Of a DNA stretch of 64,000 nucleotides, positions 22,003 through 64,000 are shown one piece after another. The number at the start of each line of letters is the position of its first letter. Within the stretch, counting starts at the first letter, position 1. The stretch comes from Blastocladiella emersonii ATCC 22665 (taxonomy: Eukaryota > Fungi > Blastocladiomycota), in NCBI GenBank assembly GCA_025594325.1, contig JANHCV010000006.1:1957496-2021495 (forward strand). Reading direction: 5' to 3'. Position numbers and translations under genes: made by a program. Under the pieces are notes generated by a model that searched no databases, was not told where the DNA came from, and was given only the letters and a program-made list of their open reading frames with translations.

Positions 22003-22009
22003 CTTTATA
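22003..22009 (-). promoter_or_regulatory. TATA box candidate for the secreted-protein gene
   Basis: TATAAAG on the minus strand, about 220 bp upstream of the ATG at 21786, in very GC-rich context. Confidence 0.55.
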
Positions 22010-44254: not shown

Positions 44255-45878
44255 CTCGGGCTGAGCGACACCGTGCCGCGCCTGCGCCGCATCTCCGAGA
44301 TCCACCGCCGGAAAAAGGAGCGGTCCGGGTCCATCTCGTCCATTGCCTCGCTGCTGCCCGCCGCCATGGAGGTCACGGACGCCGACCCGATCGCCAACGT
44401 GGTCCTGCCCGCCATACTGCCCGAGCCGACCCACCTGCCGCTGCGCAACTCGTGGAACTTTGATGTGTGGTCCTACACCCACGCCGAGCTCCTCGTCTTC
44501 CTCGTCGACATGTTCGCCGACCTCGGCCTGCTGCACACGTTCCGCATCGAACCCGACACCTTCCTCGAGTTCCTCAAGTCGGTCGAGCCCGGCTACAAGC
44601 TCAACCCCTACCACAACTTCCGCCATGCCTTTGACATGACCCAGGCCGGCTACCTGTTCCTCCGCACCTGCTGCGCCTGCGAGTCGGACGAGAGCTACAC
44701 TCCGCCGTCCACGGGCACCAACAAGTTTGACGCCGACTTTTCCGGCGCCGCTGTCCCGCACACGCCCACGTCCCATCGGCTACTTGATGGCCGCCGCCCT
44801 CAACGCCGCGGTCGCCGCCCAGCAGGCCAGCACCTCGGCGCCCGCCGCGTCCTCGTCGCCGCCGCGCAAGATCCCGCGCCTCATGTTCACGCTGCAGGAG
44901 CAGCTCGCCTTCATGCTCGCGTGCGTGTGCCACGACCTCGAGCACGACGGCAAGACCAACAACTTCCACATCGTGACGCAGTCGGACCTCGCCGTGCTCT
45001 ACAACGACCAGTCGCCGCTCGAGAACCGCCACATGCACGAGGCGTCGCGGCTCATCGCCAAGCACGCGCTCCTCGCGCAGCAGACGCGCACGGTCCAGGC
45101 CGAGATCCGCCAGCTCATGGTGCGGTCGATCCTGTCGACGGACCTCGCCAAGCACGTCGACATCCTGGCCAAGTTCAACGAGATCTGCCCGGCGTTCGAC
45201 GCCACGGACCGCGAGCACCGCGCCCGGTCGCTCGAGATGCTCATCAAGTGCGCCGACGTGTCGAACGTGATCCGGCCGCTGCACCTCGCCAAGGGCTGGT
45301 CCGACTGCATCCAGGAGGAGATGTTCCAGCAGGGCGACGTGGAGCGCGAGCAGGGGCTGCCCGTGTCCGGGTTCGGCGACCGCCTCGCGCCCCAGTCGGC
45401 GCGCCTCGGCATGTCCTTCTCCGAGTACATGTGCGCGCCCCTGTTCCGCACCATGGGCAAGGCCATTCCGCGCATGGAGGCGTACCTCAAGAACATTGCC
45501 GTCACGCGCGACTACTGGGTCGGCGTCCTCGCTGAGACCGAGACCGACACGGAGGAGGGCACCACCACCACCGGTTCGTCGTCCGTCACGCCGTCGTCGT
45601 CCGAGGGCGGCTCAGCACCCGCCTCGCGCCGACCGTCCGAAGCTCTCGCGGACGACTCGGTCATTGGGCTCGGACCGACGAGCCGGCGCCGGTCGTCCAG
45701 CAAGTCGGTCACGTCCGCCACGTCGTCCAACGGCAGCACCAGCGAAAACGCGCCCGCGGGCACGACACCGTCACCGCCGCCGCCAGTCCAGGAGGAGGAG
45801 AACGCGGATTCGTCGCGGGCCGACGCCGCCGCCGCCTCTGACCCAGCAGCACTCCGCGGTGACGCCGCAGCGCCATGA
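44255..45878 (+). CDS. Class I cyclic-nucleotide phosphodiesterase (PDEase_I), split across two reading frames
   Basis: Frame A: WNFDVW..NPYHNFRHAFDMTQ. Frame B from about 44775: CHDLEHDGKTNNF, LYNDQSPLENRH, ILSTDL, LIKCADVSNVIRP, EEMFQQGDVE. The 5' end is unresolved; ATG 44366 has a GCCGCCATGG context but coding-like sequence extends upstream. Confidence 0.85.
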
Positions 45879-47284
45879 CGGCCGCTGGTCGTCGGCCTGT
45901 CGCCTCGCGATGAGAGCGGGTTTGTGTGATTTCCCCATCGCTTTCGCGTCCAATAGATATCTTTACACTTGACATGATGAGCAACGACGTTCATTTCTTC
46001 AAGCGCCTCGACGATGAGGGGACAGTCGGCACGCTCGCCATCCAAGAGCTAGCTCGTTGCGTTTGTTTCATGTTCCTGTCCGGCGTGCGGCCAACCTGTC
46101 GTCGCCCGCGACGGCGCGCGCGCGCAAGCGCGGCATGACGACCAACGCCGAGCTGGTTGACGAGAACAAGATCCACCCGAATCGCGCCCTGCGGTCGGCC
46201 GACGTCATGTGCGCGCAGCATCACCACCAAGAAGCGGGCGGGTCCGCGAGGGCGAGACGCTGTCAGTGCTGTTTGGCGTCGACCCGTTGTTGCGCGCGCG
46301 CGCGCGAACAAGGACATGCGTTCCGAGGTGGACGGCGATGCGGCCGGCACCAAGCATCGCGGCTTGGGGGCGCCACCAAGTACACGAGATTCGCGCCGAG
46401 CCGCGCTGAAAGGGTTCCCGATGTGGCTGGCACACGTTCCAGAGACCTGGCCTGACGCGACGACGGTAGCATGAAGTAGAAGCGGGGCCGGCTGCCAGGA
46501 TGAGCCAAGGCCACGACACGCAGCGGCGCTCGAGGGCAGCGACGCGCTCGCCGGGCGGCGGAGAGCGTGTTTGGATTCAGCAAGGTTGAGCAGGGACGGC
46601 GACGGGTTGATAGCGCGCACCTGAGAGCGAGAGCAAGCGCGAGGCTTCAGCCAGACGGCAAAGCAGTAGCGAGCGGTCGAAGAACACGGTGGCGCAAGAC
46701 GTGAAGGCTGGACGGAGCACGGAACGCCGCCGTCGGCGAGGCCATGCAGCGACGCGGCGCCCGCCGTCAGGCTCGCGAGCGACCGAGCCAAGCGTGTTGC
46801 TGCTGGCACTGCTTCGGGCGGCAACAATCCAAGGGGCGACGGCTTACGGCGGGTGTACAGCTAGCGTGCACCACCGGCACACGCGGGGCTGCGGCTGCGG
46901 CTGCGGCAGCGGACAGGCGTCGGTCGTAGGCGCGTGCCACCGACCGCAGCCGCTCCAGCACGTCGACGGCCGCAGCGAGCGAGCGAGCGCGGACATCATA
47001 CCGCCCATGCTGCAGTCCGACACTGTATGAGAGAAAGTGCAGGGCGCGGTCGGCGAGAGGCGATGCGCGCGGGGACACGATGGCGAGTCGTTCGAGGGGT
47101 GGTGGCGCGCTCGCCGGCGGCAACAAGCGTCTGATTCATGCACGGGTCACGGGCGTATGGTGCCGCCGCGGCATGTGCGACGTGTTGATGCAGTATACAG
47201 GGATGCGTTTCATGGAGTGGTGAGGTAATATAGCGGGTCATGATCAGGAGGGAGAGCGAGGACCGCGCGTGGCGACGAGGCGCC

Positions 47285-47291
47285 CTTTATA
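47285..47291 (-). promoter_or_regulatory. TATA box candidate with no clearly intact downstream gene
   Basis: TATAAAG on the minus strand, the same core as the 22003-22009 box, about 45 bp upstream of an ATG at 47241. Confidence 0.35.
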
Positions 47292-48920
47292 CTCCTCCGC
47301 CCGCGCCCCCGCTGCCTGCCACGCGGCGGCCACCGCCACCGACAAGGACTCTGGCGCTCTGACGCAAGCAGCGAGCAGCGAGCACGAGCAGGATACGGCG
47401 GAGTCCGAAGCCGAACCACCGCCGCGGCGGCCTCGGCTGCGGGCGACTGGAGCTCGCCGTGTCGTGGGAGATCGGGTCAGCGGTGCGGCGGCTGGGCCCG
47501 TGCGCAGGTCACACCCGACTTACTTGACGACGACGACAACGACAACGAACCAGCCGCGTACGCATCTCGGGCCAAAGGGTCGACCACATGGTAAGGTCGA
47601 TCGCGCACGCGACGCCAGTGGCGCGTCGCTCGAGGACCAATCGGCATCGGGGATAGAGGGCGAAGGGACGCGCTGCGCTGCGCTGCACTACACTGCCGAA
47701 ATAGGGTGGCGCAACGGGAGGGGGCTGCTGCTTCCACATGCAAGCGTGAGACCTGCGCGCGCGCGTGTGATAACAGCAAGGAAACCAAAGTAGCAAGGGT
47801 GGCGGCGATGGTGCGCCGCGGCAGCAGGTGCGTTCCGCGTCGGAGAGCGAGCCGCCGCTGCCCCACCGCCCAGAACAGGCGCGGCCGCTCTGGGATTCGG
47901 GATGGGATCGAGAGCAGAGCGGAGGGAGCGCGACGCGAGGTCAACAACGACGACAAGCCGGACGAACACCATCAAGTCACCCAACCCACCGTGTTGCTTG
48001 CTCGTGGGCCGGGTCGGCCTACGCCCGCCGCCGCACCGACCACTCGCCCGTCCAGTTTGAGCACCATCTCGAGTTTGGCGGCAGGTCCGAGTACCTTGCT
48101 CGCTGCGCAGCGAGATCCCACAGCGAGGCAGCGAGCGAAGGCGGCTCTCACGGAGGCCAGGAGCAGCGGCGCGAGCAGCGCAGGTGGGGCGGGTGGGACC
48201 TGCGCGGGCGCGCGGAAACCAGACGACAAGCACACGCGCGCGAGCGAGCGAGCGAGCGAGCGAGAAGGGAGGCGAGTCCATTCGAGACACGACGAGAGAG
48301 CGCCGCGCCGCGCCGCGCCGGTCAAAGGTTGAGGGTGGGGGTGGGTGCTGGCGGCGGGGGCCGCCAGCACACGATTTTTCGATCATACCCTTCACTTGAG
48401 GGCAGCAGTAGCAGCGTAGGGGCGCAATGCAGCAAGACGGATCACCCAAAACCCTCAAACGCAGCTGCCGCCGCTGGATCAAGTCTAGACGGGAGGAGTC
48501 GAGTTGCCTCCGTGGCGAGAAGGGCGGCGGTCCGAGTCTGCGTTCCAGACGCCAGGATCGCATCCATTCGAGGCACAGATGCATGTTGCAGCGGGTCATA
48601 TATTCCATGAGATGTCATTGCGGGTTTGGTGAAGTCTCGACTTTGGGGATGAGTGAGCGGTCGCGATCGCCGCGCGAGCAAGCGAAAAAAGCTCGGGCAT
48701 CAGGTGACAATTGCCTGACCGCTGCGAGACGCGTTTCGAGACGCGCTTTTGGCGCTCTGCCTCGGGAGACGGGCAGACGACGCACAACTGCCTCCCAACA
48801 CCACACGCTTGATTGAGCCCATGCCGCGTCGCGCGGTGGGTGCATCACGTTCACATCGCAGAGTACGCACACGCGCGGGGGCCCAGAAGGCACTTGGGCA
48901 AAGTTGTTTTATGTATCGTC

Positions 48921-48995
48921 GGGGAGTAGTGAGCCAAAGCAGTCAGGTCTCTCTAGTTCCGGGCTGGCGAGCAGGGTTCGAGTCCCTGTCGCATC
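48921..48995 (+). ncRNA. tRNA-like / Pol III type-2 promoter-like element within each array unit (not a canonical tRNA)
   Basis: Perfect T-arm CAGGG-TTCGAGT-CCCTG (48972-48988) with B-box GGTTCGAGTCC and a weak A-box-like segment about 45 nt upstream. The acceptor and anticodon stems do not pair. Repeated at +2745 intervals. Confidence 0.35.
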
Positions 48996-49835
48996 TCGTC
49001 CAGTCCGCGTCATAGTATTGTAAAGGAGCCAGAGTTGCTCTGGCTGCGATGGTTCGCTACTCCAGTGGAGCAGTTGAGGCTTGGGCCGCGTACGGTGCAT
49101 GTCCTGCGGCAGACACACACGTATCATGATTGGGCGCCTAGCGTAAGATCCCGTGGCCAGGTGGTCATCTTAGACTCAACCCGCAATCGTGGCGAATCCA
49201 CGGGATAGAGGTGGAACAGATCCGGCTCAGTGGCAGTGAGCACGGTGAACACAGCAGCTCCCAGCCCCAAGCGGCTGCTCCCTCCCTTTTGCACCATACA
49301 AGAAAGTTGCGTTTACCTAAAGTACATGAAGGCGTGCACCGTACCTGCGTTTTGAGCCACTGTTACGCCGGATCAGATCAAGAACAGTGGGTCGTCGCTG
49401 TTTGCTGAACCTTCCTGAAGCTAGCTCAAGCCGTGTCCAGCGGGCGTATCTCAGAAATTTCACGTAGAACGTGTGCATGTCATGGCTAGCAAAGTTGCTT
49501 AGCTTGCGTACGGCTCTAGTTTGCCGCACCTCAAACGCTGCACAACCCAAGTGTGGCGGCTCCAAGGTGACTCTGACCAAGGACCAAACTTGAACGCTGC
49601 TGCAGCCGTATTACACACGTGCTTCTTGCCAATTGCCTGACGCTAGGTTGTAGATCTTTCAAAGATCTATCAAAGAGTATAACGAAGGTTGGGGGTGACT
49701 TGAGTCACATAAGGGAGCAATGGGCAGCAAACGTGTCTCGCGCTTGAGTCGACCGCACAAGGGCGAAACGATCAGATTGGACGTGGACACCTTCAGAAAC
49801 CTTTGAGTAGACTATTCCATCTGCAGAATGCCGCT

Positions 49836-50035
49836 GAGAACGCGCGCATAAGTCAAAGGGTGATTCCAAACGGGCGTTGTCAACCTCATCGAGTTGTGTC
49901 CAAACCGACCCCACGAGGCCAAGAAGACCAGATTGAGCATGCTCACCTTGACCAACTATGTTCGTTCAGCTATCAGCTGCAGATTGCTGTCGAGAACACG
50001 CGCCTAGGTCAAAGGGTGATTCCAAACGGGCGTTG
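49836..50035 (+). repeat. 44-nt direct repeat pair inside each array unit, 156 nt apart
   Basis: 49836-49879 and 49992-50035 match at 41/44 positions, with an identical 28-nt core GTCAAAGGGTGATTCCAAACGGGCGTTG. Confidence 0.92.
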
Positions 50036-53000
50036 ACGCGCAAAGTCCCTCGCCGCAACCCTCTTGCTGCGGCGAGGTCGCGCGCAACTCCACCTTGCCT
50101 GCCAACACGTCAAAGCTCAATCACCACCGTTGATCCGTCCAGCAGGCGGCGTTATGGAGTCTGTAGCAAAGAGTAACGTGCACGCAAGCAGCACCTTTGA
50201 GCAGCGCTGTAGAGGGGAAGTAAGCAAACTTTGAGCGCTCAATGCTGCCCACGAGATGGAGCGCAATCTTTCCCAGCTGTGTCTCATTGCACGCAAGGTG
50301 AGCAGCAGTGGCTCGTCAAGCAGGCAAGGAACAGGACAGAGTAGGGAAGGCGTGAGGGAGCCGATCTGAAGCTAAGCGTGTTCCGGAGCACCCTGCTGAG
50401 TCGAACGCGTGCTCAGCACGGCGCGCGTGCAGGCAGGCAGCCGCAGTAGCAAGTAGCGACAGGCGGGGGCTGCTGCTTCCACATGCAAGCGTGAGACCTG
50501 CGCGCGCGCGTGTGATAACAGCAAGGAAACCAAAGTAGCAAGGGTGGCGGCGATGGTGCGCCGCGGCAGCAGGTGCGTTCCGCGTCGGAGAGCGAGCCGC
50601 CGCTGCCCCACCGCCCAGAACAGGCGCGGCCGCTCTGGGATTCGGGATGGGATCGAGAGCAGAGCGGAGGGAGCGCGACGCGAGGTCAACAACGACGACA
50701 AGCCGGACGAACACCATCAAGTCACCCAACCCACCGTGTTGCTTGCTCGTGGGCCGGGTCGGCCTACGCCCGCCGCCGCACCGACCACTCGCCCGTCCAG
50801 TTTGAGCACCATCTCGAGTTTGGCGGCAGGTCCGAGTACCTTGCTCGCTGCGCAGCGAGATCCCACAGCGAGGCAGCGAGCGAAGGCGGCTCTCACGGAG
50901 GCCAGGAGCAGCGGCGCGAGCAGCGCAGGTGGGGCGGGTGGGACCTGCGCGGGCGCGCGGAAACCAGACGACAAGCACACGCGCGCGAGCGAGCGAGCGA
51001 GCGAGCGAGAAGGGAGGCGAGTCCATTCGAGACACGACGAGAGAGCGCCGCGCCGCGCCGCGCCGGTCAAAGGTTGAGGGTGGGGGTGGGTGCTGGCGGC
51101 GGGGGCCGCCAGCACACGATTTTTCGATCATACCCTTCACTTGAGGGCAGCAGTAGCAGCGTAGGGGCGCAATGCAGCAAGACGGATCACCCAAAACCCT
51201 CAAACGCAGCTGCCGCCGCTGGATCAAGTCTAGACGGGAGGAGTCGAGTTGCCTCCGTGGCGAGAAGGGCGGCGGTCCGAGTCTGCGTTCCAGACGCCAG
51301 GATCGCATCCATTCGAGGCACAGATGCATGTTGCAGCGGGTCATATATTCCATGAGATGTCATTGCGGGTTTGGTGAAGTCTCGACTTTGGGGATGAGTG
51401 AGCGGTCGCGATCGCCGCGCGAGCAAGCGAAAAAAGCTCGGGCATCAGGTGACAATTGCCTGACCGCTGCGAGACGCGTTTCGAGACGCGCTTTTGGCGC
51501 TCTGCCTCGGGAGACGGGCAGACGACGCACAACTGCCTCCCAACACCACACGCTTGATTGAGCCCATGCCGCGTCGCGCGGTGGGTGCATCACGTTCACA
51601 TCGCAGAGTACGCACACGCGCGGGGGCCCAGAAGGCACTTGGGCAAAGTTGTTTTATGTATCGTCGGGGAGTAGTGAGCCAAAGCAGTCAGGTCTCTCTA
51701 GTTCCGGGCTGGCGAGCAGGGTTCGAGTCCCTGTCGCATCTCGTCCAGTCCGCGTCATAGTATTGTAAAGGAGCCAGAGTTGCTCTGGCTGCGATGGTTC
51801 GCTACTCCAGTGGAGCAGTTGAGGCTTGGGCCGCGTACGGTGCATGTCCTGCGGCAGACACACACGTATCATGATTGGGCGCCTAGCGTAAGATCCCGTG
51901 GCCAGGTGGTCATCTTAGACTCAACCCGCAATCGTGGCGAATCCACGGGATAGAGGTGGAACAGATCCGGCTCAGTGGCAGTGAGCACGGTGAACACAGC
52001 AGCTCCCAGCCCCAAGCGGCTGCTCCCTCCCTTTTGCACCATACAAGAAAGTTGCGTTTACCTAAAGTACATGAAGGCGTGCACCGTACCTGCGTTTTGA
52101 GCCACTGTTACGCCGGATCAGATCAAGAACAGTGGGTCGTCGCTGTTTGCTGAACCTTCCTGAAGCTAGCTCAAGCCGTGTCCAGCGGGCGTATCTCAGA
52201 AATTTCACGTAGAACGTGTGCATGTCATGGCTAGCAAAGTTGCTTAGCTTGCGTACGGCTCTAGTTTGCCGCACCTCAAACGCTGCACAACCCAAGTGTG
52301 GCGGCTCCAAGGTGACTCTGACCAAGGACCAAACTTGAACGCTGCTGCAGCCGTATTACACACGTGCTTCTTGCCAATTGCCTGACGCTAGGTTGTAGAT
52401 CTTTCAAAGATCTATCAAAGAGTATAACGAAGGTTGGGGGTGACTTGAGTCACATAAGGGAGCAATGGGCAGCAAACGTGTCTCGCGCTTGAGTCGACCG
52501 CACAAGGGCGAAACGATCAGATTGGACGTGGACACCTTCAGAAACCTTTGAGTAGACTATTCCATCTGCAGAATGCCGCTGAGAACGCGCGCATAAGTCA
52601 AAGGGTGATTCCAAACGGGCGTTGTCAACCTCATCGAGTTGTGTCCAAACCGACCCCACGAGGCCAAGAAGACCAGATTGAGCATGCTCACCTTGACCAA
52701 CTATGTTCGTTCAGCTATCAGCTGCAGATTGCTGTCGAGAACACGCGCCTAGGTCAAAGGGTGATTCCAAACGGGCGTTGACGCGCAAAGTCCCTCGCCG
52801 CAACCCTCTTGCTGCGGCGAGGTCGCGCGCAACTCCACCTTGCCTGCCAACACGTCAAAGCTCAATCACCACCGTTGATCCGTCCAGCAGGCGGCGTTAT
52901 GGAGTCTGTAGCAAAGAGTAACGTGCACGCAAGCAGCACCTTTGAGCAGCGCTGTAGAGGGGAAGTAAGCAAACTTTGAGCGCTCAATGCTGCCCACGAG

Positions 53001-56000
53001 ATGGAGCGCAATCTTTCCCAACTGTGTCTCATTGCACGCAAGGTGAGCAGCAGTGGCTCGTCAAGCAGGCAAGGAACAGGACAGAGTAGGGAAGGCGTGA
53101 GGGAGCCGATCTGAAGCTAAGCGTGTTCCGGAGCACCCTGCTGAGTCGAACGCGTGCTCAGCACGGCGCGCGTGCAGGCAGGCAGCCGCAGTAGCAAGTA
53201 GCGACAGGCGGGGGCTGCTGCTTCCACATGCAAGCGTGAGACCTGCGCGCGCGCGTGTGATAACAGCAAGGAAACCAAAGTAGCAAGGGTGGCGGCGATG
53301 GTGCGCCGCGGCAGCAGGTGCGTTCCGCGTCGGAGAGCGAGCCGCCGCTGCCCCACCGCCCAGAACAGGCGCGGCCGCTCTGGGATTCGGGATGGGATCG
53401 AGAGCAGAGCGGAGGGAGCGCGACGCGAGGTCAACAACGACGACAAGCCGGACGAACACCATCAAGTCACCCAACCCACCGTGTTGCTTGCTCGTGGGCC
53501 GGGTCGGCCTACGCCCGCCGCCGCACCGACCACTCGCCCGTCCAGTTTGAGCACCATCTCGAGTTTGGCGGCAGGTCCGAGTACCTTGCTCGCTGCGCAG
53601 CGAGATCCCACAGCGAGGCAGCGAGCGAAGGCGGCTCTCACGGAGGCCAGGAGCAGCGGCGCGAGCAGCGCAGGTGGGGCGGGTGGGACCTGCGCGGGCG
53701 CGCGGAAACCAGACGACAAGCACACGCGCGCGAGCGAGCGAGCGAGCGAGCGAGAAGGGAGGCGAGTCCATTCGAGACACGACGAGAGAGCGCCGCGCCG
53801 CGCCGCGCCGGTCAAAGGTTGAGGGTGGGGGTGGGTGCTGGCGGCGGGGGCCGCCAGCACACGATTTTTCGATCATACCCTTCACTTGAGGGCAGCAGTA
53901 GCAGCGTAGGGGCGCAATGCAGCAAGACGGATCACCCAAAACCCTCAAACGCAGCTGCCGCCGCTGGATCAAGTCTAGACGGGAGGAGTCGAGTTGCCTC
54001 CGTGGCGAGAAGGGCGGCGGTCCGAGTCTGCGTTCCAGACGCCAGGATCGCATCCATTCGAGGCACAGATGCATGTTGCAGCGGGTCATATATTCCATGA
54101 GATGTCATTGCGGGTTTGGTGAAGTCTCGACTTTGGGGATGAGTGAGCGGTCGCGATCGCCGCGCGAGCAAGCGAAAAAAGCTCGGGCATCAGGTGACAA
54201 TTGCCTGACCGCTGCGAGACGCGTTTCGAGACGCGCTTTTGGCGCTCTGCCTCGGGAGACGGGCAGACGACGCACAACTGCCTCCCAACACCACACGCTT
54301 GATTGAGCCCATGCCGCGTCGCGCGGTGGGTGCATCACGTTCACATCGCAGAGTACGCACACGCGCGGGGGCCCAGAAGGCACTTGGGCAAAGTTGTTTT
54401 ATGTATCGTCGGGGAGTAGTGAGCCAAAGCAGTCAGGTCTCTCTAGTTCCGGGCTGGCGAGCAGGGTTCGAGTCCCTGTCGCATCTCGTCCAGTCCGCGT
54501 CATAGTATTGTAAAGGAGCCAGAGTTGCTCTGGCTGCGATGGTTCGCTACTCCAGTGGAGCAGTTGAGGCTTGGGCCGCGTACGGTGCATGTCCTGCGGC
54601 AGACACACACGTATCATGATTGGGCGCCTAGCGTAAGATCCCGTGGCCAGGTGGTCATCTTAGACTCAACCCGCAATCGTGGCGAATCCACGGGATAGAG
54701 GTGGAACAGATCCGGCTCAGTGGCAGTGAGCACGGTGAACACAGCAGCTCCCAGCCCCAAGCGGCTGCTCCCTCCCTTTTGCACCATACAAGAAAGTTGC
54801 GTTTACCTAAAGTACATGAAGGCGTGCACCGTACCTGCGTTTTGAGCCACTGTTACGCCGGATCAGATCAAGAACAGTGGGTCGTCGCTGTTTGCTGAAC
54901 CTTCCTGAAGCTAGCTCAAGCCGTGTCCAGCGGGCGTATCTCAGAAATTTCACGTAGAACGTGTGCATGTCATGGCTAGCAAAGTTGCTTAGCTTGCGTA
55001 CGGCTCTAGTTTGCCGCACCTCAAACGCTGCACAACCCAAGTGTGGCGGCTCCAAGGTGACTCTGACCAAGGACCAAACTTGAACGCTGCTGCAGCCGTA
55101 TTACACACGTGCTTCTTGCCAATTGCCTGACGCTAGGTTGTAGATCTTTCAAAGATCTATCAAAGAGTATAACGAAGGTTGGGGGTGACTTGAGTCACAT
55201 AAGGGAGCAATGGGCAGCAAACGTGTCTCGCGCTTGAGTCGACCGCACAAGGGCGAAACGATCAGATTGGACGTGGACACCTTCAGAAACCTTTGAGTAG
55301 ACTATTCCATCTGCAGAATGCCGCTGAGAACGCGCGCATAAGTCAAAGGGTGATTCCAAACGGGCGTTGTCAACCTCATCGAGTTGTGTCCAAACCGACC
55401 CCACGAGGCCAAGAAGACCAGATTGAGCATGCTCACCTTGACCAACTATGTTCGTTCAGCTATCAGCTGCAGATTGCTGTCGAGAACACGCGCCTAGGTC
55501 AAAGGGTGATTCCAAACGGGCGTTGACGCGCAAAGTCCCTCGCCGCAACCCTCTTGCTGCGGCGAGGTCGCGCGCAACTCCACCTTGCCTGCCAACACGT
55601 CAAAGCTCAATCACCACCGTTGATCCGTCCAGCAGGCGGCGTTATGGAGTCTGTAGCAAAGAGTAACGTGCACGCAAGCAGCACCTTTGAGCAGCGCTGT
55701 AGAGGGGAAGTAAGCAAACTTTGAGCGCTCAATGCTGCCCACGAGATGGAGCGCAATCTTTCCCAACTGTGTCTCATTGCACGCAAGGTGAGCAGCAGTG
55801 GCTCGTCAAGCAGGCAAGGAACAGGACAGAGTAGGGAAGGCGTGAGGGAGCCGATCTGAAGCTAAGCGTGTTCCGGAGCACCCTGCTGAGTCGAACGCGT
55901 GCTCAGCACGGCGCGCGTGCAGGCAGGCAGCCGCAGTAGCAAGTAGCGACAGGCGGGGGCTGCTGCTTCCACATGCAAGCGTGAGACCTGCGCGCGCGCG

Positions 56001-59000
56001 TGTGATAACAGCAAGGAAACCAAAGTAGCAAGGGTGGCGGCGATGGTGCGCCGCGGCAGCAGGTGCGTTCCGCGTCGGAGAGCGAGCCGCCGCTGCCCCA
56101 CCGCCCAGAACAGGCGCGGCCGCTCTGGGATTCGGGATGGGATCGAGAGCAGAGCGGAGGGAGCGCGACGCGAGGTCAACAACGACGACAAGCCGGACGA
56201 ACACCATCAAGTCACCCAACCCACCGTGTTGCTTGCTCGTGGGCCGGGTCGGCCTACGCCCGCCGCCGCACCGACCACTCGCCCGTCCAGTTTGAGCACC
56301 ATCTCGAGTTTGGCGGCAGGTCCGAGTACCTTGCTCGCTGCGCAGCGAGATCCCACAGCGAGGCAGCGAGCGAAGGCGGCTCTCACGGAGGCCAGGAGCA
56401 GCGGCGCGAGCAGCGCAGGTGGGGCGGGTGGGACCTGCGCGGGCGCGCGGAAACCAGACGACAAGCACACGCGCGCGAGCGAGCGAGCGAGCGAGCGAGA
56501 AGGGAGGCGAGTCCATTCGAGACACGACGAGAGAGCGCCGCGCCGCGCCGCGCCGGTCAAAGGTTGAGGGTGGGGGTGGGTGCTGGCGGCGGGGGCCGCC
56601 AGCACACGATTTTTCGATCATACCCTTCACTTGAGGGCAGCAGTAGCAGCGTAGGGGCGCAATGCAGCAAGACGGATCACCCAAAACCCTCAAACGCAGC
56701 TGCCGCCGCTGGATCAAGTCTAGACGGGAGGAGTCGAGTTGCCTCCGTGGCGAGAAGGGCGGCGGTCCGAGTCTGCGTTCCAGACGCCAGGATCGCATCC
56801 ATTCGAGGCACAGATGCATGTTGCAGCGGGTCATATATTCCATGAGATGTCATTGCGGGTTTGGTGAAGTCTCGACTTTGGGGATGAGTGAGCGGTCGCG
56901 ATCGCCGCGCGAGCAAGCGAAAAAAGCTCGGGCATCAGGTGACAATTGCCTGACCGCTGCGAGACGCGTTTCGAGACGCGCTTTTGGCGCTCTGCCTCGG
57001 GAGACGGGCAGACGACGCACAACTGCCTCCCAACACCACACGCTTGATTGAGCCCATGCCGCGTCGCGCGGTGGGTGCATCACGTTCACATCGCAGAGTA
57101 CGCACACGCGCGGGGGCCCAGAAGGCACTTGGGCAAAGTTGTTTTATGTATCGTCGGGGAGTAGTGAGCCAAAGCAGTCAGGTCTCTCTAGTTCCGGGCT
57201 GGCGAGCAGGGTTCGAGTCCCTGTCGCATCTCGTCCAGTCCGCGTCATAGTATTGTAAAGGAGCCAGAGTTGCTCTGGCTGCGATGGTTCGCTACTCCAG
57301 TGGAGCAGTTGAGGCTTGGGCCGCGTACGGTGCATGTCCTGCGGCAGACACACACGTATCATGATTGGGCGCCTAGCGTAAGATCCCGTGGCCAGGTGGT
57401 CATCTTAGACTCAACCCGCAATCGTGGCGAATCCACGGGATAGAGGTGGAACAGATCCGGCTCAGTGGCAGTGAGCACGGTGAACACAGCAGCTCCCAGC
57501 CCCAAGCGGCTGCTCCCTCCCTTTTGCACCATACAAGAAAGTTGCGTTTACCTAAAGTACATGAAGGCGTGCACCGTACCTGCGTTTTGAGCCACTGTTA
57601 CGCCGGATCAGATCAAGAACAGTGGGTCGTCGCTGTTTGCTGAACCTTCCTGAAGCTAGCTCAAGCCGTGTCCAGCGGGCGTATCTCAGAAATTTCACGT
57701 AGAACGTGTGCATGTCATGGCTAGCAAAGTTGCTTAGCTTGCGTACGGCTCTAGTTTGCCGCACCTCAAACGCTGCACAACCCAAGTGTGGCGGCTCCAA
57801 GGTGACTCTGACCAAGGACCAAACTTGAACGCTGCTGCAGCCGTATTACACACGTGCTTCTTGCCAATTGCCTGACGCTAGGTTGTAGATCTTTCAAAGA
57901 TCTATCAAAGAGTATAACGAAGGTTGGGGGTGACTTGAGTCACATAAGGGAGCAATGGGCAGCAAACGTGTCTCGCGCTTGAGTCGACCGCACAAGGGCG
58001 AAACGATCAGATTGGACGTGGACACCTTCAGAAACCTTTGAGTAGACTATTCCATCTGCAGAATGCCGCTGAGAACGCGCGCATAAGTCAAAGGGTGATT
58101 CCAAACGGGCGTTGTCAACCTCATCGAGTTGTGTCCAAACCGACCCCACGAGGCCAAGAAGACCAGATTGAGCATGCTCACCTTGACCAACTATGTTCGT
58201 TCAGCTATCAGCTGCAGATTGCTGTCGAGAACACGCGCCTAGGTCAAAGGGTGATTCCAAACGGGCGTTGACGCGCAAAGTCCCTCGCCGCAACCCTCTT
58301 GCTGCGGCGAGGTCGCGCGCAACTCCACCTTGCCTGCCAACACGTCAAAGCTCAATCACCACCGTTGATCCGTCCAGCAGGCGGCGTTATGGAGTCTGTA
58401 GCAAAGAGTAACGTGCACGCAAGCAGCACCTTTGAGCAGCGCTGTAGAGGGGAAGTAAGCAAACTTTGAGCGCTCAATGCTGCCCACGAGATGGAGCGCA
58501 ATCTTTCCCAGCTGTGTCTCATTGCACGCAAGGTGAGCAGCAGTGGCTCGTCAAGCAGGCAAGGAACAGGACAGAGTAGGGAAGGCGTGAGGGAGCCGAT
58601 CTGAAGCTAAGCGTGTTCCGGAGCACCCTGCTGAGTCGAACGCGTGCTCAGCACGGCGCGCGTGCAGGCAGGCAGCCGCAGTAGCAAGTAGCGACAGGCG
58701 GGGGCTGCTGCTTCCACATGCAAGCGTGAGACCTGCGCGCGCGCGTGTGATAACAGCAAGGAAACCAAAGTAGCAAGGGTGGCGGCGATGGTGCGCCGCG
58801 GCAGCAGGTGCGTTCCGCGTCGGAGAGCGAGCCGCCGCTGCCCCACCGCCCAGAACAGGCGCGGCCGCTCTGGGATTCGGGATGGGATCGAGAGCAGAGC
58901 GGAGGGAGCGCGACGCGAGGTCAACAACGACGACAAGCCGGACGAACACCATCAAGTCACCCAACCCACCGTGTTGCTTGCTCGTGGGCCGGGTCGGCCT

Positions 59001-62000
59001 ACGCCCGCCGCCGCACCGACCACTCGCCCGTCCAGTTTGAGCACCATCTCGAGTTTGGCGGCAGGTCCGAGTACCTTGCTCGCTGCGCAGCGAGATCCCA
59101 CAGCGAGGCAGCGAGCGAAGGCGGCTCTCACGGAGGCCAGGAGCAGCGGCGCGAGCAGCGCAGGTGGGGCGGGTGGGACCTGCGCGGGCGCGCGGAAACC
59201 AGACGACAAGCACACGCGCGCGAGCGAGCGAGCGAGCGAGCGAGAAGGGAGGCGAGTCCATTCGAGACACGACGAGAGAGCGCCGCGCCGCGCCGCGCCG
59301 GTCAAAGGTTGAGGGTGGGGGTGGGTGCTGGCGGCGGGGGCCGCCAGCACACGATTTTTCGATCATACCCTTCACTTGAGGGCAGCAGTAGCAGCGTAGG
59401 GGCGCAATGCAGCAAGACGGATCACCCAAAACCCTCAAACGCAGCTGCCGCCGCTGGATCAAGTCTAGACGGGAGGAGTCGAGTTGCCTCCGTGGCGAGA
59501 AGGGCGGCGGTCCGAGTCTGCGTTCCAGACGCCAGGATCGCATCCATTCGAGGCACAGATGCATGTTGCAGCGGGTCATATATTCCATGAGATGTCATTG
59601 CGGGTTTGGTGAAGTCTCGACTTTGGGGATGAGTGAGCGGTCGCGATCGCCGCGCGAGCAAGCGAAAAAAGCTCGGGCATCAGGTGACAATTGCCTGACC
59701 GCTGCGAGACGCGTTTCGAGACGCGCTTTTGGCGCTCTGCCTCGGGAGACGGGCAGACGACGCACAACTGCCTCCCAACACCACACGCTTGATTGAGCCC
59801 ATGCCGCGTCGCGCGGTGGGTGCATCACGTTCACATCGCAGAGTACGCACACGCGCGGGGGCCCAGAAGGCACTTGGGCAAAGTTGTTTTATGTATCGTC
59901 GGGGAGTAGTGAGCCAAAGCAGTCAGGTCTCTCTAGTTCCGGGCTGGCGAGCAGGGTTCGAGTCCCTGTCGCATCTCGTCCAGTCCGCGTCATAGTATTG
60001 TAAAGGAGCCAGAGTTGCTCTGGCTGCGATGGTTCGCTACTCCAGTGGAGCAGTTGAGGCTTGGGCCGCGTACGGTGCATGTCCTGCGGCAGACACACAC
60101 GTATCATGATTGGGCGCCTAGCGTAAGATCCCGTGGCCAGGTGGTCATCTTAGACTCAACCCGCAATCGTGGCGAATCCACGGGATAGAGGTGGAACAGA
60201 TCCGGCTCAGTGGCAGTGAGCACGGTGAACACAGCAGCTCCCAGCCCCAAGCGGCTGCTCCCTCCCTTTTGCACCATACAAGAAAGTTGCGTTTACCTAA
60301 AGTACATGAAGGCGTGCACCGTACCTGCGTTTTGAGCCACTGTTACGCCGGATCAGATCAAGAACAGTGGGTCGTCGCTGTTTGCTGAACCTTCCTGAAG
60401 CTAGCTCAAGCCGTGTCCAGCGGGCGTATCTCAGAAATTTCACGTAGAACGTGTGCATGTCATGGCTAGCAAAGTTGCTTAGCTTGCGTACGGCTCTAGT
60501 TTGCCGCACCTCAAACGCTGCACAACCCAAGTGTGGCGGCTCCAAGGTGACTCTGACCAAGGACCAAACTTGAACGCTGCTGCAGCCGTATTACACACGT
60601 GCTTCTTGCCAATTGCCTGACGCTAGGTTGTAGATCTTTCAAAGATCTATCAAAGAGTATAACGAAGGTTGGGGGTGACTTGAGTCACATAAGGGAGCAA
60701 TGGGCAGCAAACGTGTCTCGCGCTTGAGTCGACCGCACAAGGGCGAAACGATCAGATTGGACGTGGACACCTTCAGAAACCTTTGAGTAGACTATTCCAT
60801 CTGCAGAATGCCGCTGAGAACGCGCGCATAAGTCAAAGGGTGATTCCAAACGGGCGTTGTCAACCTCATCGAGTTGTGTCCAAACCGACCCCACGAGGCC
60901 AAGAAGACCAGATTGAGCATGCTCACCTTGACCAACTATGTTCGTTCAGCTATCAGCTGCAGATTGCTGTCGAGAACACGCGCCTAGGTCAAAGGGTGAT
61001 TCCAAACGGGCGTTGACGCGCAAAGTCCCTCGCCGCAACCCTCTTGCTGCGGCGAGGTCGCGCGCAACTCCACCTTGCCTGCCAACACGTCAAAGCTCAA
61101 TCACCACCGTTGATCCGTCCAGCAGGCGGCGTTATGGAGTCTGTAGCAAAGAGTAACGTGCACGCAAGCAGCACCTTTGAGCAGCGCTGTAGAGGGGAAG
61201 TAAGCAAACTTTGAGCGCTCAATGCTGCCCACGAGATGGAGCGCAATCTTTCCCAGCTGTGTCTCATTGCACGCAAGGTGAGCAGCAGTGGCTCGTCAAG
61301 CAGGCAAGGAACAGGACAGAGTAGGGAAGGCGTGAGGGAGCCGATCTGAAGCTAAGCGTGTTCCGGAGCACCCTGCTGAGTCGAACGCGTGCTCAGCACG
61401 GCGCGCGTGCAGGCAGGCAGCCGCAGTAGCAAGTAGCGACAGGCGGGGGCTGCTGCTTCCACATGCAAGCGTGAGACCTGCGCGCGCGCGTGTGATAACA
61501 GCAAGGAAACCAAAGTAGCAAGGGTGGCGGCGATGGTGCGCCGCGGCAGCAGGTGCGTTCCGCGTCGGAGAGCGAGCCGCCGCTGCCCCACCGCCCAGAA
61601 CAGGCGCGGCCGCTCTGGGATTCGGGATGGGATCGAGAGCAGAGCGGAGGGAGCGCGACGCGAGGTCAACAACGACGACAAGCCGGACGAACACCATCAA
61701 GTCACCCAACCCACCGTGTTGCTTGCTCGTGGGCCGGGTCGGCCTACGCCCGCCGCCGCACCGACCACTCGCCCGTCCAGTTTGAGCACCATCTCGAGTT
61801 TGGCGGCAGGTCCGAGTACCTTGCTCGCTGCGCAGCGAGATCCCACAGCGAGGCAGCGAGCGAAGGCGGCTCTCACGGAGGCCAGGAGCAGCGGCGCGAG
61901 CAGCGCAGGTGGGGCGGGTGGGACCTGCGCGGGCGCGCGGAAACCAGACGACAAGCACACGCGCGCGAGCGAGCGAGCGAGCGAGCGAGAAGGGAGGCGA

Positions 62001-64000
62001 GTCCATTCGAGACACGACGAGAGAGCGCCGCGCCGCGCCGCGCCGGTCAAAGGTTGAGGGTGGGGGTGGGTGCTGGCGGCGGGGGCCGCCAGCACACGAT
62101 TTTTCGATCATACCCTTCACTTGAGGGCAGCAGTAGCAGCGTAGGGGCGCAATGCAGCAAGACGGATCACCCAAAACCCTCAAACGCAGCTGCCGCCGCT
62201 GGATCAAGTCTAGACGGGAGGAGTCGAGTTGCCTCCGTGGCGAGAAGGGCGGCGGTCCGAGTCTGCGTTCCAGACGCCAGGATCGCATCCATTCGAGGCA
62301 CAGATGCATGTTGCAGCGGGTCATATATTCCATGAGATGTCATTGCGGGTTTGGTGAAGTCTCGACTTTGGGGATGAGTGAGCGGTCGCGATCGCCGCGC
62401 GAGCAAGCGAAAAAAGCTCGGGCATCAGGTGACAATTGCCTGACCGCTGCGAGACGCGTTTCGAGACGCGCTTTTGGCGCTCTGCCTCGGGAGACGGGCA
62501 GACGACGCACAACTGCCTCCCAACACCACACGCTTGATTGAGCCCATGCCGCGTCGCGCGGTGGGTGCATCACGTTCACATCGCAGAGTACGCACACGCG
62601 CGGGGGCCCAGAAGGCACTTGGGCAAAGTTGTTTTATGTATCGTCGGGGAGTAGTGAGCCAAAGCAGTCAGGTCTCTCTAGTTCCGGGCTGGCGAGCAGG
62701 GTTCGAGTCCCTGTCGCATCTCGTCCAGTCCGCGTCATAGTATTGTAAAGGAGCCAGAGTTGCTCTGGCTGCGATGGTTCGCTACTCCAGTGGAGCAGTT
62801 GAGGCTTGGGCCGCGTACGGTGCATGTCCTGCGGCAGACACACACGTATCATGATTGGGCGCCTAGCGTAAGATCCCGTGGCCAGGTGGTCATCTTAGAC
62901 TCAACCCGCAATCGTGGCGAATCCACGGGATAGAGGTGGAACAGATCCGGCTCAGTGGCAGTGAGCACGGTGAACACAGCAGCTCCCAGCCCCAAGCGGC
63001 TGCTCCCTCCCTTTTGCACCATACAAGAAAGTTGCGTTTACCTAAAGTACATGAAGGCGTGCACCGTACCTGCGTTTTGAGCCACTGTTACGCCGGATCA
63101 GATCAAGAACAGTGGGTCGTCGCTGTTTGCTGAACCTTCCTGAAGCTAGCTCAAGCCGTGTCCAGCGGGCGTATCTCAGAAATTTCACGTAGAACGTGTG
63201 CATGTCATGGCTAGCAAAGTTGCTTAGCTTGCGTACGGCTCTAGTTTGCCGCACCTCAAACGCTGCACAACCCAAGTGTGGCGGCTCCAAGGTGACTCTG
63301 ACCAAGGACCAAACTTGAACGCTGCTGCAGCCGTATTACACACGTGCTTCTTGCCAATTGCCTGACGCTAGGTTGTAGATCTTTCAAAGATCTATCAAAG
63401 AGTATAACGAAGGTTGGGGGTGACTTGAGTCACATAAGGGAGCAATGGGCAGCAAACGTGTCTCGCGCTTGAGTCGACCGCACAAGGGCGAAACGATCAG
63501 ATTGGACGTGGACACCTTCAGAAACCTTTGAGTAGACTATTCCATCTGCAGAATGCCGCTGAGAACGCGCGCATAAGTCAAAGGGTGATTCCAAACGGGC
63601 GTTGTCAACCTCATCGAGTTGTGTCCAAACCGACCCCACGAGGCCAAGAAGACCAGATTGAGCATGCTCACCTTGACCAACTATGTTCGTTCAGCTATCA
63701 GCTGCAGATTGCTGTCGAGAACACGCGCCTAGGTCAAAGGGTGATTCCAAACGGGCGTTGACGCGCAAAGTCCCTCGCCGCAACCCTCTTGCTGCGGCGA
63801 GGTCGCGCGCAACTCCACCTTGCCTGCCAACACGTCAAAGCTCAATCACCACCGTTGATCCGTCCAGCAGGCGGCGTTATGGAGTCTGTAGCAAAGAGTA
63901 ACGTGCACGCAAGCAGCACCTTTGAGCAGCGCTGTAGAGGGGAAGTAAGCAAACTTTGAGCGCTCAATGCTGCCCACGAGATGGAGCGCAATCTTTCCCA

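What the first reader, a model, noticed from the sequence alone, without database searches (positions are those of the whole stretch)
47720..64000. Highly homogeneous 2,745-bp macrosatellite with no protein gene abruptly ends a gene-dense region
Seen: at least 5.9 near-identical head-to-tail copies, with no rRNA, transposase, RT or other protein motif that I can recognise. The unit is bipartite: a GC-rich left part (45/60 GC at 48121-48180) and a lower-GC right part (24/60 at 49621-49680) that is unlike the host genes. Inference: such homogeneity implies very recent amplification or active concerted evolution, as in arrays of ncRNA genes, centromeric/subtelomeric repeats, or reintegrated rolling-circle DNA. 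Together with the Pol III-like element, hairpins and motif cluster below, this is the best candidate here for an undescribed functional element.
Basis: partly seen in the sequence, partly recalled or inferred. Interest (0 to 1): 0.75.

Follow-up and report, generated by a model that had tools for sequence, protein, structure and literature searches.

The report
Chromosome-end repeat carrying a small-RNA-like gene
The 2.7-kb repeat is an ordinary kind of non-coding chromosome-end (subtelomeric) satellite of the water fungus Blastocladiella emersonii, but every copy carries one unusually well-kept 0.4-kb piece that looks like a gene for an undescribed small structured RNA.

Summary
Window 47720-64000 has 5.93 head-to-tail copies of a 2,745-bp unit with one variable site, and it runs to the last base of contig C18.

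It is a subtelomeric macrosatellite. The same family ends contig C8 (4.1 copies). It also starts contig C11 (6.5 copies), where it joins the TTTAGG telomere directly. In all three places it points towards the chromosome end. The C18 flank is 93% identical to the flank beside the C11 array. Arrays are uniform inside but differ from each other by 0.5-3.6%. This scan had already described the family on other DNA (C11, note s1-259970).

The unit does not encode a protein. Its ORFs are frameshifted in the other arrays and have no Pfam match.

New here: unit positions 1183-1571 (window 48902-49290) vary about five times less than the rest of the unit. This block has a perfect B-box and ends at an oligo-T run. 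It has an 84%-identical paralogue on C6 whose substitutions tend to keep a long hairpin. It is laid out like this genome's SRP RNA genes. I read it as a candidate RNA polymerase III gene (about 45%), with no transcript evidence. Two other pieces resemble rDNA spacer subrepeats.

The parts
44232..46948 (+). Shared subtelomeric block proximal to the array. It overlaps the 3' part of a phosphodiesterase-like ORF.
   Evidence: 93.2% identical over 2,763 bp to C11:21526-18782, the DNA directly beside the telomere-capped C11 array.
46392..47616 (+). Continuation of the shared subtelomeric block, also present at the C2 chromosome end.
   Evidence: 81.5% identical over 1,280 bp to C2:12602-11372, about 11-12 kb from the C2 telomere.
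47720..64000 (+). Subtelomeric macrosatellite array. Units of 2,745 bp start at 47720, 50465, 53210, 55955, 58700 and 61445; the last is cut at the contig end. The + strand runs towards the chromosome end.
   Evidence: Period-2745 self-identity with one variable site. The contig ends at window base 64000. The same family is at the C8 end and the C11 start, the latter under the telomere.
48236..48264 (.). (GCGA)7 microsatellite in the GC-rich left part of the unit, once per unit.
   Evidence: Tandem Repeats Finder.
48525..48687 (+). Segment with a TATA-like CATATATT motif, related to the upstream region of a C5 gene. Possible telomere-directed promoter (inferred).
   Evidence: 80% identical over 164 bp to C5:1206826-1206982. 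That C5 stretch lies about 120 nt upstream of a 290-aa ORF with a weak Forkhead match.
48663..48776 (+). Upstream sequence blocks shared with the C6 paralogue of the core. Possible upstream control elements.
   Evidence: BLAST pieces at 74-94% identity; alignment.
48902..49290 (+). Conserved core: candidate RNA polymerase III gene for a structured RNA of about 375 nt. It repeats every 2,745 bp: 51647-52035, 54392-54780, 57137-57525, 59882-60270, 62627-63015.
   Evidence: 4 variable of 389 sites among C18, C8, C11 and C20, against 93 of 1,692 elsewhere (Fisher p = 2.6e-5). 84% identical paralogue at C6:725693-726090 and C6:933006-933403. Folding energy z = -3.2. The C6 substitutions break 11 predicted pairs against 21.6 expected (p = 0.0002).
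48975..48985 (+). B-box (T-arm-like GGTTCGAGTCC). It sits in the tip of the long 5' hairpin of the core.
   Evidence: The only exact match to GGTTCGANTCC in the unit, on either strand. Invariant in all 19 copies, including C6.
49287..49290 (+). Oligo-T run (T4; T8 in the C6 paralogue) that ends the conserved core. Candidate Pol III terminator.
   Evidence: Homology to C6 stops here, and variation between arrays resumes 6 nt later. There is no other T4 run inside the 375 nt upstream.
49742..50038 (+). Two modules of about 135 nt (49742-49877 and 49906-50038), related to each other and to rDNA spacer subrepeats.
   Evidence: 70-75% identical to three or four sites in the roughly 635-bp subrepeats of the rDNA intergenic spacer at C17:13.4-14.8 kb. 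LSU rRNA genes lie at C17:3405-6978 and 20769-24342.
50276..50276 (.). The only variable site of the array (unit position 2557; homologous sites 53021, 55766, 58511, 61256).
   Evidence: Period-2745 comparison.

Best explanation
The array is a telomere-associated (subtelomeric) macrosatellite of Blastocladiella emersonii. A non-coding unit of about 2.7-2.9 kb is stacked head to tail between a shared subtelomeric block and the TTTAGG telomere on at least three chromosome ends, always with the same strand running towards the end. Each array is kept uniform by exchange within the array (unequal sister-chromatid exchange, replication slippage or break-induced replication; this is inferred). Arrays on different ends drift apart slowly. 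The C18 contig simply stops inside its array, because reads of about 10 kb cannot span near-identical copies. The unit is a mosaic: a GC-rich part, a promoter-like piece related to a C5 gene's upstream region, a conserved core of about 390 nt with a paralogue on C6, and two modules related to rDNA spacer subrepeats. The core is the only part under visible constraint. It most likely acts through RNA polymerase III machinery, either as a multi-copy gene for a structured RNA or as an array of TFIIIC-binding B-box sites at chromosome ends. This last step is inferred, not shown.
For: Array structure. The window ends at the contig end. The same family ends C8 (period 2,740, 4.1 copies, 99.5% to C18). 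It also starts C11 (period 2,857, 6.5 copies, 96.6%). On C11 the telomere repeat is joined directly to unit position 1078. Orientation relative to the chromosome end is the same in all three. The census is complete at 19 core copies: 6 on C18, 4 on C8, 6 on C11, 1 on C20 and 2 on C6. The C18 flank is 93% identical to the flank beside the C11 array and 81% to the C2 subtelomere. Inside the arrays there are 0 (C8), 0 (C11) and 1 (C18) variable sites, against 13-99 fixed differences between arrays. Non-coding: no Pfam match; the ORFs are frameshifted in C8, C11 and C20, and substitutions show no codon-position bias. Organism and telomere motif: 21 contigs, N50 2.02 Mb, an AAACCT repeat, HiFi reads of about 10.5 kb (PMC9730499), matching the contig lengths and ends seen. 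For the core.
Against: On C18 and C8 no telomere is seen, because the contigs stop inside the arrays. Their terminal position is inferred from orientation, from the shared flank (C18 only) and from C11. The C8 flank shares nothing with the other subtelomeres over the 12 kb compared. One 2.25-kb solo copy is interstitial (C20:873433-875657). Perfect uniformity inside arrays could be partly produced by a de Bruijn graph assembler collapsing near-identical copies. Copy numbers are lower bounds, and I could not check read depth. No transcription or protein-binding data exist for the core.
Confidence: 0.88

Rival explanations
1. The array is first of all a multi-copy gene array, like 5S rDNA, spliced-leader RNA or Entamoeba tRNA arrays. 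Its payload is a Pol III-transcribed structured RNA of about 375 nt (window 48902-49290 in each unit). The subtelomeric position is secondary. This overlaps the best explanation rather than excluding it.
For: The core varies about five times less than the rest of the unit, in two independent comparisons, and has no indels. The conserved block ends exactly at an oligo-T run, both between arrays and against the C6 paralogue. There is a perfect B-box, with an A-box-like motif about 45 nt upstream. The SRP RNA genes of the same genome have the same layout: a tRNA-like B-box leader that is not a tRNA gene, then the RNA, then T4. Folding energy is z = -3.2 on the + strand against -2.6 on the - strand, and the + strand is 17 kcal/mol more stable. 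There are 4-5 compensatory pair changes, and fewer broken pairs than expected (p = 0.0002). Of the pairs that changed, 14 of 25 stay paired, against 33-37% when the partner is shifted by 1-3 bases.
Against: There is no transcript evidence. No Rfam family matches. Only two independent lineages exist (the subtelomeric unit and C6), so the covariation evidence is thin. It comes almost entirely from the 5' hairpin; the 3' domain shows 4 kept and 7 broken pairs. The A-box matches only 6 of 9 specified positions. No relative was found in metagenome contigs. The low divergence could also come from gene conversion limited to this stretch.
Confidence: 0.45
2. The array derives from a mobile element: a tRNA-derived SINE, a non-autonomous LTR element or a Helitron-type rolling-circle element, amplified in tandem.
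For: The core has a tRNA-like head with a B-box. A solo copy sits at an internal site on C20.
Against: BLAST and a covariance model both find only 19 core copies, in two lineages, with nothing dispersed. The C20 copy has no target-site duplication, terminal repeat or A-tail at its ends. Homology to C6 extends upstream of the would-be transcript, which points to copying as DNA rather than retroposition. No reverse transcriptase, transposase or Rep/helicase domain was found.
Confidence: 0.04
3. The array is a piece of the rDNA, or a satellite derived from its intergenic spacer.
For: Two modules of about 135 nt in the unit are 70-75% identical to the roughly 635-bp subrepeats upstream of the rRNA genes on C17.
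Against: This covers only about 270 of 2,745 bp. No rRNA or 5S sequence lies in the unit. The rDNA unit is 17,364 bp and sits at the start of C17. The rest of the unit has no match there.
Confidence: 0.05
4. The array is an assembly artefact: a single-copy or low-copy segment looped by the assembler.
For: The copies are essentially identical, the contig ends inside the array, and a de Bruijn graph assembler was used on reads of about 10.5 kb.
Against: Three separate arrays have different periods (2,745, 2,740 and 2,857 bp). They have different proximal junctions (unit positions 1, 1790 and 2378) and array-specific fixed differences. One is capped by a telomere. The C18 array has an internal G/A variant in a non-periodic pattern.
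Confidence: 0.03

Closest known systems
Subtelomeric / telomere-associated tandem repeats in general (for example human D4Z4 3.3-kb macrosatellite at 4q35/10q26, Plasmodium rep20, Chironomus and plant subtelomeric satellites); from general knowledge, not tested here
   Same: Kilobase-scale units lie head to tail next to the telomere on several chromosome ends. Orientation is fixed. Uniformity is higher within an array than between arrays. A shared proximal block is present.
   Different: There is no sequence relationship. There is no ORF, whereas D4Z4 carries DUX4. The organism is an early-diverging fungus with a TTTAGG telomere. The unit holds a constrained Pol III-type module.
Yeast Y' elements and fungal telomere-linked helicase (TLH) repeats; from general knowledge
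   Same: Fungal, telomere-adjacent, sometimes tandem, and homogenised by recombination. They can be amplified when telomeres are maintained by recombination.
   Different: Those elements encode a helicase. The B. emersonii unit has no conserved ORF.
Entamoeba tRNA gene arrays (PMC2652664)
   Same: These are tandem arrays of units with Pol III genes separated by non-coding DNA. They were proposed, but not shown, to sit at chromosome ends.
   Different: The Entamoeba units hold real tRNA or 5S genes, and no telomere repeats are known there. Here the Pol III-type element is not a tRNA, and a canonical telomere caps the array.
Leader-type Pol III genes (S. cerevisiae RPR1, from general knowledge; SRP RNA genes of this same genome, seen here)
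   Same: A tRNA-like stretch carrying a B-box lies upstream of the body of the RNA, and the unit ends in an oligo-T run.
   Different: The core shares only the B-box stretch with the SRP genes. It matches no Rfam family. In the predicted fold the B-box stretch is part of a conserved hairpin rather than a discarded leader.
Satellites derived from the rDNA intergenic spacer (known in plants; from general knowledge)
   Same: Part of the unit is related to spacer subrepeats.
   Different: Only two modules of about 135 nt at 70-75% identity; the remaining 90% of the unit is unrelated to the rDNA.

Membership tests
Subtelomeric (telomere-associated) tandem repeat | Adjoins the telomere repeat tract | tested here: met
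   On C11 the (CCTAAA)n tract (bases 1-95) joins unit position 1078 directly. On C18 itself this cannot be seen, because the contig stops inside the array.
Subtelomeric (telomere-associated) tandem repeat | Present on several chromosome ends in one orientation relative to the end | tested here: met
   C18 3' end (+), C8 3' end (+) and C11 5' end (-). In each case the unit's + strand runs towards the end.
Subtelomeric (telomere-associated) tandem repeat | Head-to-tail array, more uniform within than between arrays | tested here: met
   1, 0 and 0 variable sites within the C18, C8 and C11 arrays; 13-99 substitutions between arrays.
Subtelomeric (telomere-associated) tandem repeat | Proximal flank shared with other chromosome ends | tested here: met
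   Window 44232-46948 is 93% identical to C11:21526-18782, and window 46392-47616 is 81% identical to the C2 subtelomere. Not met for C8 over the 12 kb compared.
Subtelomeric (telomere-associated) tandem repeat | Copy number above single copy in the raw reads | not testable with these tools
   No read data are available here. Note s1-259970 says the repeat is over-represented in raw DNA; I did not check this.
RNA polymerase III type-2 (tRNA-like promoter) gene | B-box GGTTCGANTCC | tested here: met
   One exact match per unit, at window 48975-48985 on the + strand, invariant in all copies.
RNA polymerase III type-2 (tRNA-like promoter) gene | A-box TRGCNNAGTGG 30-60 nt upstream of the B-box | tested here: inconclusive
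   No exact match. An AGTAGTGAGCC stretch about 45 nt upstream fits about 6 of 9 specified positions and is invariant.
RNA polymerase III type-2 (tRNA-like promoter) gene | Oligo-T terminator at the 3' end and none inside | tested here: met
   T4 at 49287-49290 (T8 in C6), and no T4 run in the 375 nt upstream. Conservation stops there.
RNA polymerase III type-2 (tRNA-like promoter) gene | A transcript, or Pol III/TFIIIC occupancy | not testable with these tools
   No expression or ChIP data could be reached.
Structured ncRNA | Secondary structure kept through compensatory change | tested here: inconclusive
   The 5' hairpin has 4 compensatory, 6 one-sided and 4 broken pairs; the 3' domain has 0, 4 and 7. 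Overall there are fewer broken pairs than expected (p = 0.0002). Only two lineages are available.
Known RNA families (Rfam 15), including tRNA, 5S, SRP, RNase P/MRP and snRNAs | Score at or above the family threshold | tested here: not met
   No hits. SRP RNA and RNase P RNA genes lie elsewhere in the genome.
SINE / retroposon | Many dispersed copies with target-site duplications and a 3' tail | tested here: not met
   19 copies in two lineages. No duplication or tail at the ends of the C20 copy.
rDNA or 5S unit | An rRNA gene in the unit, or the unit matching the spacer as a whole | tested here: not met
   No rRNA match. Only two modules of about 135 nt resemble spacer subrepeats.
Y'/TLH-type subtelomeric element | A conserved helicase ORF | tested here: not met
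   No Pfam domain. The ORFs are broken in sister arrays.
Satellite centromere | A large mid-chromosome block | tested here: not met
   All arrays are at contig ends and one is under a telomere. The module search found no link to other satellite blocks.

The most novel reading that the evidence does not exclude
Each subtelomeric unit is an active RNA polymerase III gene for an undescribed structured RNA of about 375 nt, made of a long T-loop-capped hairpin plus a highly conserved 3' domain. A second locus lies on C6. B. emersonii would then keep a Pol III gene and TFIIIC-site array at its chromosome ends. The array could supply the RNA in bulk. It could also tether or insulate the ends, as B-box clusters do in fission yeast.
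Probability: 0.35. Interest if true: 0.65.

Novelty: new member of a known kind. Interest (0 to 1): 0.42.

Why it matters
Subtelomeres of early-diverging fungi are essentially undescribed. The genome paper for this species reports only the AAACCT telomere motif and does not mention satellites.

This report explains why contig C18 ends where it does, and the same holds for C8. It marks window positions from about 44.2 kb onwards as subtelomere, which matters for annotating the gene fragments there.

If the conserved core proves to be transcribed, it would be a new structured RNA family whose genes are amplified at chromosome ends. It would also be a natural system for asking whether Pol III/TFIIIC sites organise chromosome ends outside yeasts. 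If it is not transcribed, the array is simply one more subtelomeric satellite.

Tried and rejected
- **Rfam:** gathering thresholds on the whole window, then permissive thresholds on the unit and on the C6 locus. Nothing credible; the best hit was a T-arm look-alike of mascRNA at E 0.2-0.7.
- **tRNA search:** ARAGORN on the window, on the C6 and C20 copies and on the SRP loci found no tRNA.
- **RNase P, MRP or SRP RNA:** rejected. RNase P RNA genes lie on C17, and the only weak MRP-model hits fall on two of those same loci. SRP RNA genes lie on C15 and C6. The core shares only the B-box with the SRP genes.
- **Telomerase RNA:** rejected. The core has no stretch complementary to 1.5 telomere repeats. 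The one ACCTAAA heptamer lies outside the core and is mutated on C11.
- **Protein coding:** rejected.
- **Further, more divergent copies of the core:** a covariance model of the 5' hairpin found only the same 19 copies.
- **Relatives in other organisms:** two exact-pattern scans of metagenome contigs found nothing. No collection of eukaryotic genomes was available.
- **C6 context:** the ORFs around the C6 paralogue have no Pfam match. The identity of the two C6 copies comes from a recent inverted duplication, so it is not evidence of selection.
- **Interstitial telomere repeats** near the C20, C6, C8 and C5 loci: none.
- **Link to the 138-bp candidate centromere satellites** that other agents noted: none found.
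- I took the organism's name from earlier scan notes and checked it against the published assembly statistics.
- **Bacterial-type promoter/terminator scan:** not informative for this eukaryote.
Full report
**1. The observation**

Window 47720-64000 is a head-to-tail array with a period of exactly 2,745 bp. Comparing each base with the base 2,745 positions later gives perfect identity from 47720 onwards. The only exception is one site, unit position 2557 (50276 vs 53021 and 55766 vs 58511). That makes 5.93 copies with one variable site. The left boundary is sharp.

The unit is GC-rich on the left (0.66-0.70) and GC-poorer on the right (0.50-0.54). Rfam finds nothing at gathering thresholds, and ARAGORN finds no tRNA.

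The array runs to the very end of the contig.

**2. Organism and assembly**

The genome has 32.65 Mb in 21 contigs at about 70% GC. Two contig starts (C2 and C11) carry (CCTAAA)n, so the telomere repeat is TTTAGG. Earlier notes of this scan name Blastocladiella emersonii.

The published ATCC 22665 assembly fits. It has 21 contigs, an N50 of 2.02 Mb, an 'AAACCT' telomere motif and PacBio HiFi reads averaging 10.5 kb, assembled with the La Jolla Assembler (PMC9730499). That paper does not describe satellites. Reads of this length cannot span more than 10 kb of near-identical units. This explains why contigs stop inside the array, and why assembled copy numbers are lower bounds.

Many other contig ends also stop in shared repeats.

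**3. Where else the repeat occurs**

- **C8 end.** An array begins at C8:550551, at unit position 1790. It runs 4.08 copies to the contig end with a period of 2,740 bp, on the + strand.
- **C11 start.** After 95 bp of telomere repeat, the sequence continues directly with the reverse complement of unit positions 1078 to 1. Six full units of 2,857 bp follow, then a partial unit ending at unit position 2378 (C11:18781). That is 6.54 copies.
- **C20.** A solo copy of 2.25 kb (unit 143-2392) lies at the internal site C20:873433-875657. It has no target-site duplication or terminal repeats.

A search with the core sequence finds 19 copies and scored every candidate: 6 on C18, 4 on C8, 6 on C11, 1 on C20 and 2 on C6.

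In all three arrays the unit's + strand runs towards the contig or chromosome end. On C11 that end is a telomere.

The C18 flank (window 44232-46948) is 93% identical to C11:21526-18782, which lies directly beside the C11 array. Window 46392-47616 is 81% identical to C2:12602-11372, near the C2 telomere. The gene-dense, chromosome-specific part of the window therefore ends near 44.2 kb, where a shared subtelomere begins.

The C8 flank shares nothing with the others over the 12 kb compared.

This is the anatomy of a subtelomeric, telomere-associated satellite. I reached it from the contig ends before reading note s1-259970, which had reached the same verdict for the C11 array.

**4. Homogenisation**

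Within arrays there are 1 (C18), 0 (C8) and 0 (C11) variable sites. Between arrays the differences are:

| Pair | Substitutions | Identity |
|---|---|---|
| C18 vs C8 | 13 | 99.5% |
| C18 vs C11 | 93 | 96.6% |
| C8 vs C11 | 99 | 96.4% |
| C20 solo copy vs the three arrays | 56-70 | about 97% |

There are also indels that change the period. The three arrays start at different unit positions on their proximal side: 1, 1790 and 2378.

Array-specific variants fixed in every copy mean one of two things: recent expansion of each array from a single unit, or ongoing exchange within arrays. Which process is at work is inferred. Some flattening of real variation by the assembler cannot be excluded.

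The different periods, junctions and fixed differences rule out a simple assembly loop.

**5. Not protein-coding**

The nine longest ORFs of the unit have no Pfam match even at E = 1. The longest ones (345 aa on the - strand, 260 aa on the + strand) are interrupted in the sister copies. C8 has a 5-bp deletion, C11 has 1-bp and 8-bp indels, and C20 has many. Substitutions fall evenly on the three codon positions, for example 6/7/7 and 13/11/18. These ORFs are what GC-rich DNA produces by chance.

**6. The unit is a mosaic**

- **Unit 806-968** (window 48525-48687) is 80% identical to C5:1206826-1206982. That C5 stretch lies about 120 nt upstream of a 290-aa ORF with a weak Forkhead match. It contains a TATA-like CATATATT motif.
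- **Unit 944-1057 and 1153-1571** match a locus present twice on C6, at 725.7 kb and 933.2 kb. These two C6 copies lie in an inverted duplication that is more than 10 kb long and 99.97% identical.
- **Unit 2023-2158 and 2187-2319** are two related modules, 70-75% identical to the roughly 635-bp subrepeats of the rDNA spacer at C17:12.8-15.3 kb. These subrepeats lie upstream of the rRNA genes, and the rDNA unit is 17,364 bp.

**7. The conserved core (new in this report)**

Divergence between the four versions of the unit is very uneven. Unit 1183-1571 has 4 variable sites in 389 and no indels. The rest of the comparable sequence has 93 variable sites in 1,692, plus 69 gap columns (Fisher p = 2.6e-5).

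Three of the four variable core sites are private to the C20 solo copy. The three telomeric arrays differ at a single core position. Variation resumes 6 nt after an oligo-T run at 1568-1571. The homology to the C6 paralogue (84%) stops at the same oligo-T run, which is T8 in C6.

Signals for RNA polymerase III in the core:
- It holds the unit's only exact match to the B-box consensus (GGTTCGAGTCC, window 48975-48985).
- An invariant A-box-like stretch lies about 45 nt upstream, but it fits only about 6 of 9 specified positions.
- There is no internal T4 run over 375 nt.

This genome's SRP RNA genes (C15:120618, C6:64131) are built the same way. A tRNA-like stretch with a B-box lies about 25 nt upstream of the mature 5' end, and it is not a tRNA gene. 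A T4 run follows the 3' end. Apart from the B-box, the core and the SRP genes are unrelated.

Evidence on folding:
- The + strand folds at -162 kcal/mol (z = -3.2), and the C6 paralogue at -163 (z = -3.1). The - strand folds at -146 (z = -2.6).
- RNAalifold predicts a 140-nt hairpin with the B-box in its T-loop-like tip. It shows 4 compensatory changes between the two lineages, plus one more in the 3' domain.
- I also used a structure predicted from the C18 sequence alone. On that structure the C6 substitutions break 11 pairs against 21.6 expected (p = 0.0002), with 4 compensatory changes against 1.2 expected (p = 0.03).
- Of the pairs that changed, 14 of 25 stay paired, against 33-37% when the partner is shifted by 1-3 bases.
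- The support comes from the 5' hairpin. The 3' domain is conserved in sequence (11% divergent, against 28% for the 5' part), but its predicted pairs are not supported (4 kept, 7 broken).

The core is not RNase P RNA or SRP RNA, because those genes lie elsewhere in the genome. The RNase MRP model hits only two of the RNase P loci, weakly. The core matches no Rfam family, and it has no telomerase-template-like stretch.

It is not a dispersed SINE either. BLAST and a covariance model of the 5' hairpin both find only the same 19 copies. No relative turned up in metagenome contigs, and no collection of eukaryotic genomes was available.

**8. How it most likely works**

Shown:
- a telomere-adjacent tandem array on at least three ends;
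- one orientation relative to the end;
- no coding capacity;
- uniformity within arrays;
- one constrained block of 390 nt with Pol III-type signals.

Inferred:
- Arrays expand, contract and stay uniform through unequal exchange or break-induced replication, as in other subtelomeres.
- The core is either transcribed by Pol III into a structured RNA of about 375 nt, or it serves as an array of TFIIIC-binding sites.
- The promoter-like piece at window 48525-48687 points towards the telomere. On C11 the telomere is attached only about 200 nt downstream of it (unit 1078), so the last unit there could drive a TERRA-like transcript. This is speculation.

My odds are 0.88 that the array is a subtelomeric satellite, about 0.45 that the core is a real Pol III gene, and about 0.35 for the full novel reading.

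**9. Comparison with what is known, and verdict**

As a class this is a known kind of element. It resembles D4Z4-like subtelomeric macrosatellites. It also resembles yeast Y' and TLH repeats, but without their helicase.

The nearest conceptual parallel for Pol III genes in terminal arrays is the Entamoeba tRNA arrays, whose terminal position was only proposed (PMC2652664).

The family is new in sequence, and the genome paper does not describe it. This scan had already found and classified it on C11.

The added value of this report has three parts:
- assigning the C18 (and C8) arrays to that family;
- delimiting the subtelomere in this window;
- identifying the constrained Pol III-type core and its C6 paralogue.

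Noticed in passing
L068 (C15:119618-121963) and L069 (C6:63131-65477): Both SRP RNA genes are preceded by a tRNA-like leader with a B-box (GGGGTTCGAATCCCC) about 25 nt upstream of the mature 5' end. ARAGORN does not call the leader a tRNA. Both genes end in T4. This is a leader-type Pol III promoter like yeast RPR1, here on SRP RNA.
   Followed up: partly
C6:725581-736000 and C6:933500-923000 (L008/L013, L009/L014): Inverted duplication more than 10 kb long and 99.97% identical, with arms about 207 kb apart. A 2.6-kb stretch at only about 80% identity precedes it. The switch to near-identity lies about 100 bp upstream of the core paralogue. ORFs there have no Pfam match.
   Followed up: partly
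C17:1-24342 (L012, L017): rDNA sits at the start of contig C17 with a 17,364-bp unit (LSU at 3405-6978 and 20769-24342, minus strand). The spacer holds subrepeats of about 635 bp at 70-75% identity, around 12.8-15.3 kb.
   Followed up: partly
C12 and C13 ends (L029/L049, L030/L050): The first 400 bp of each of these small contigs (58.8 kb and 32.2 kb) is the exact reverse complement of its last 400 bp. The contigs may be palindromic assembly artefacts.
   Followed up: no
Contig ends L036/L041/L052 (C20 start, C4 end, C15 end), L037/L042 (C21 start, C5 end), and L021/L044/L033/L046/L048: Several contigs stop in the same repeated elements, some 100% identical over 400 bp. Most contig breaks in this assembly are therefore repeat-driven, and some contigs may be neighbours.
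   Followed up: no
C2:1-900 (L063): The telomere tract is about 900 bp long. Variant repeats (CCTAA, CCAAA, CCTA) are interspersed among the CCTAAA repeats. This end has no 2.7-kb array in its first 20 kb.
   Followed up: no
C17:1027453-1027784, C17:899240-899584, C17:927839-928183 (L065-L067): Three RNase P RNA-like genes, two of them scoring identically, each with a TATAAA about 30 nt upstream. The RNase MRP model hits only the second pair, weakly (32 bits), so no separate MRP RNA gene was identified.
   Followed up: partly
window 44232-45535: The 3' part of the phosphodiesterase-like ORF (43598-45535) lies inside the block shared with the C11 subtelomere at 93% identity. It is therefore a member of a subtelomeric gene or pseudogene family.
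   Followed up: no
window 48345-48370: Perfect 11-bp GC-rich hairpin followed by ATTTTTC, on the + strand of every unit. Its meaning is unknown.
   Followed up: no
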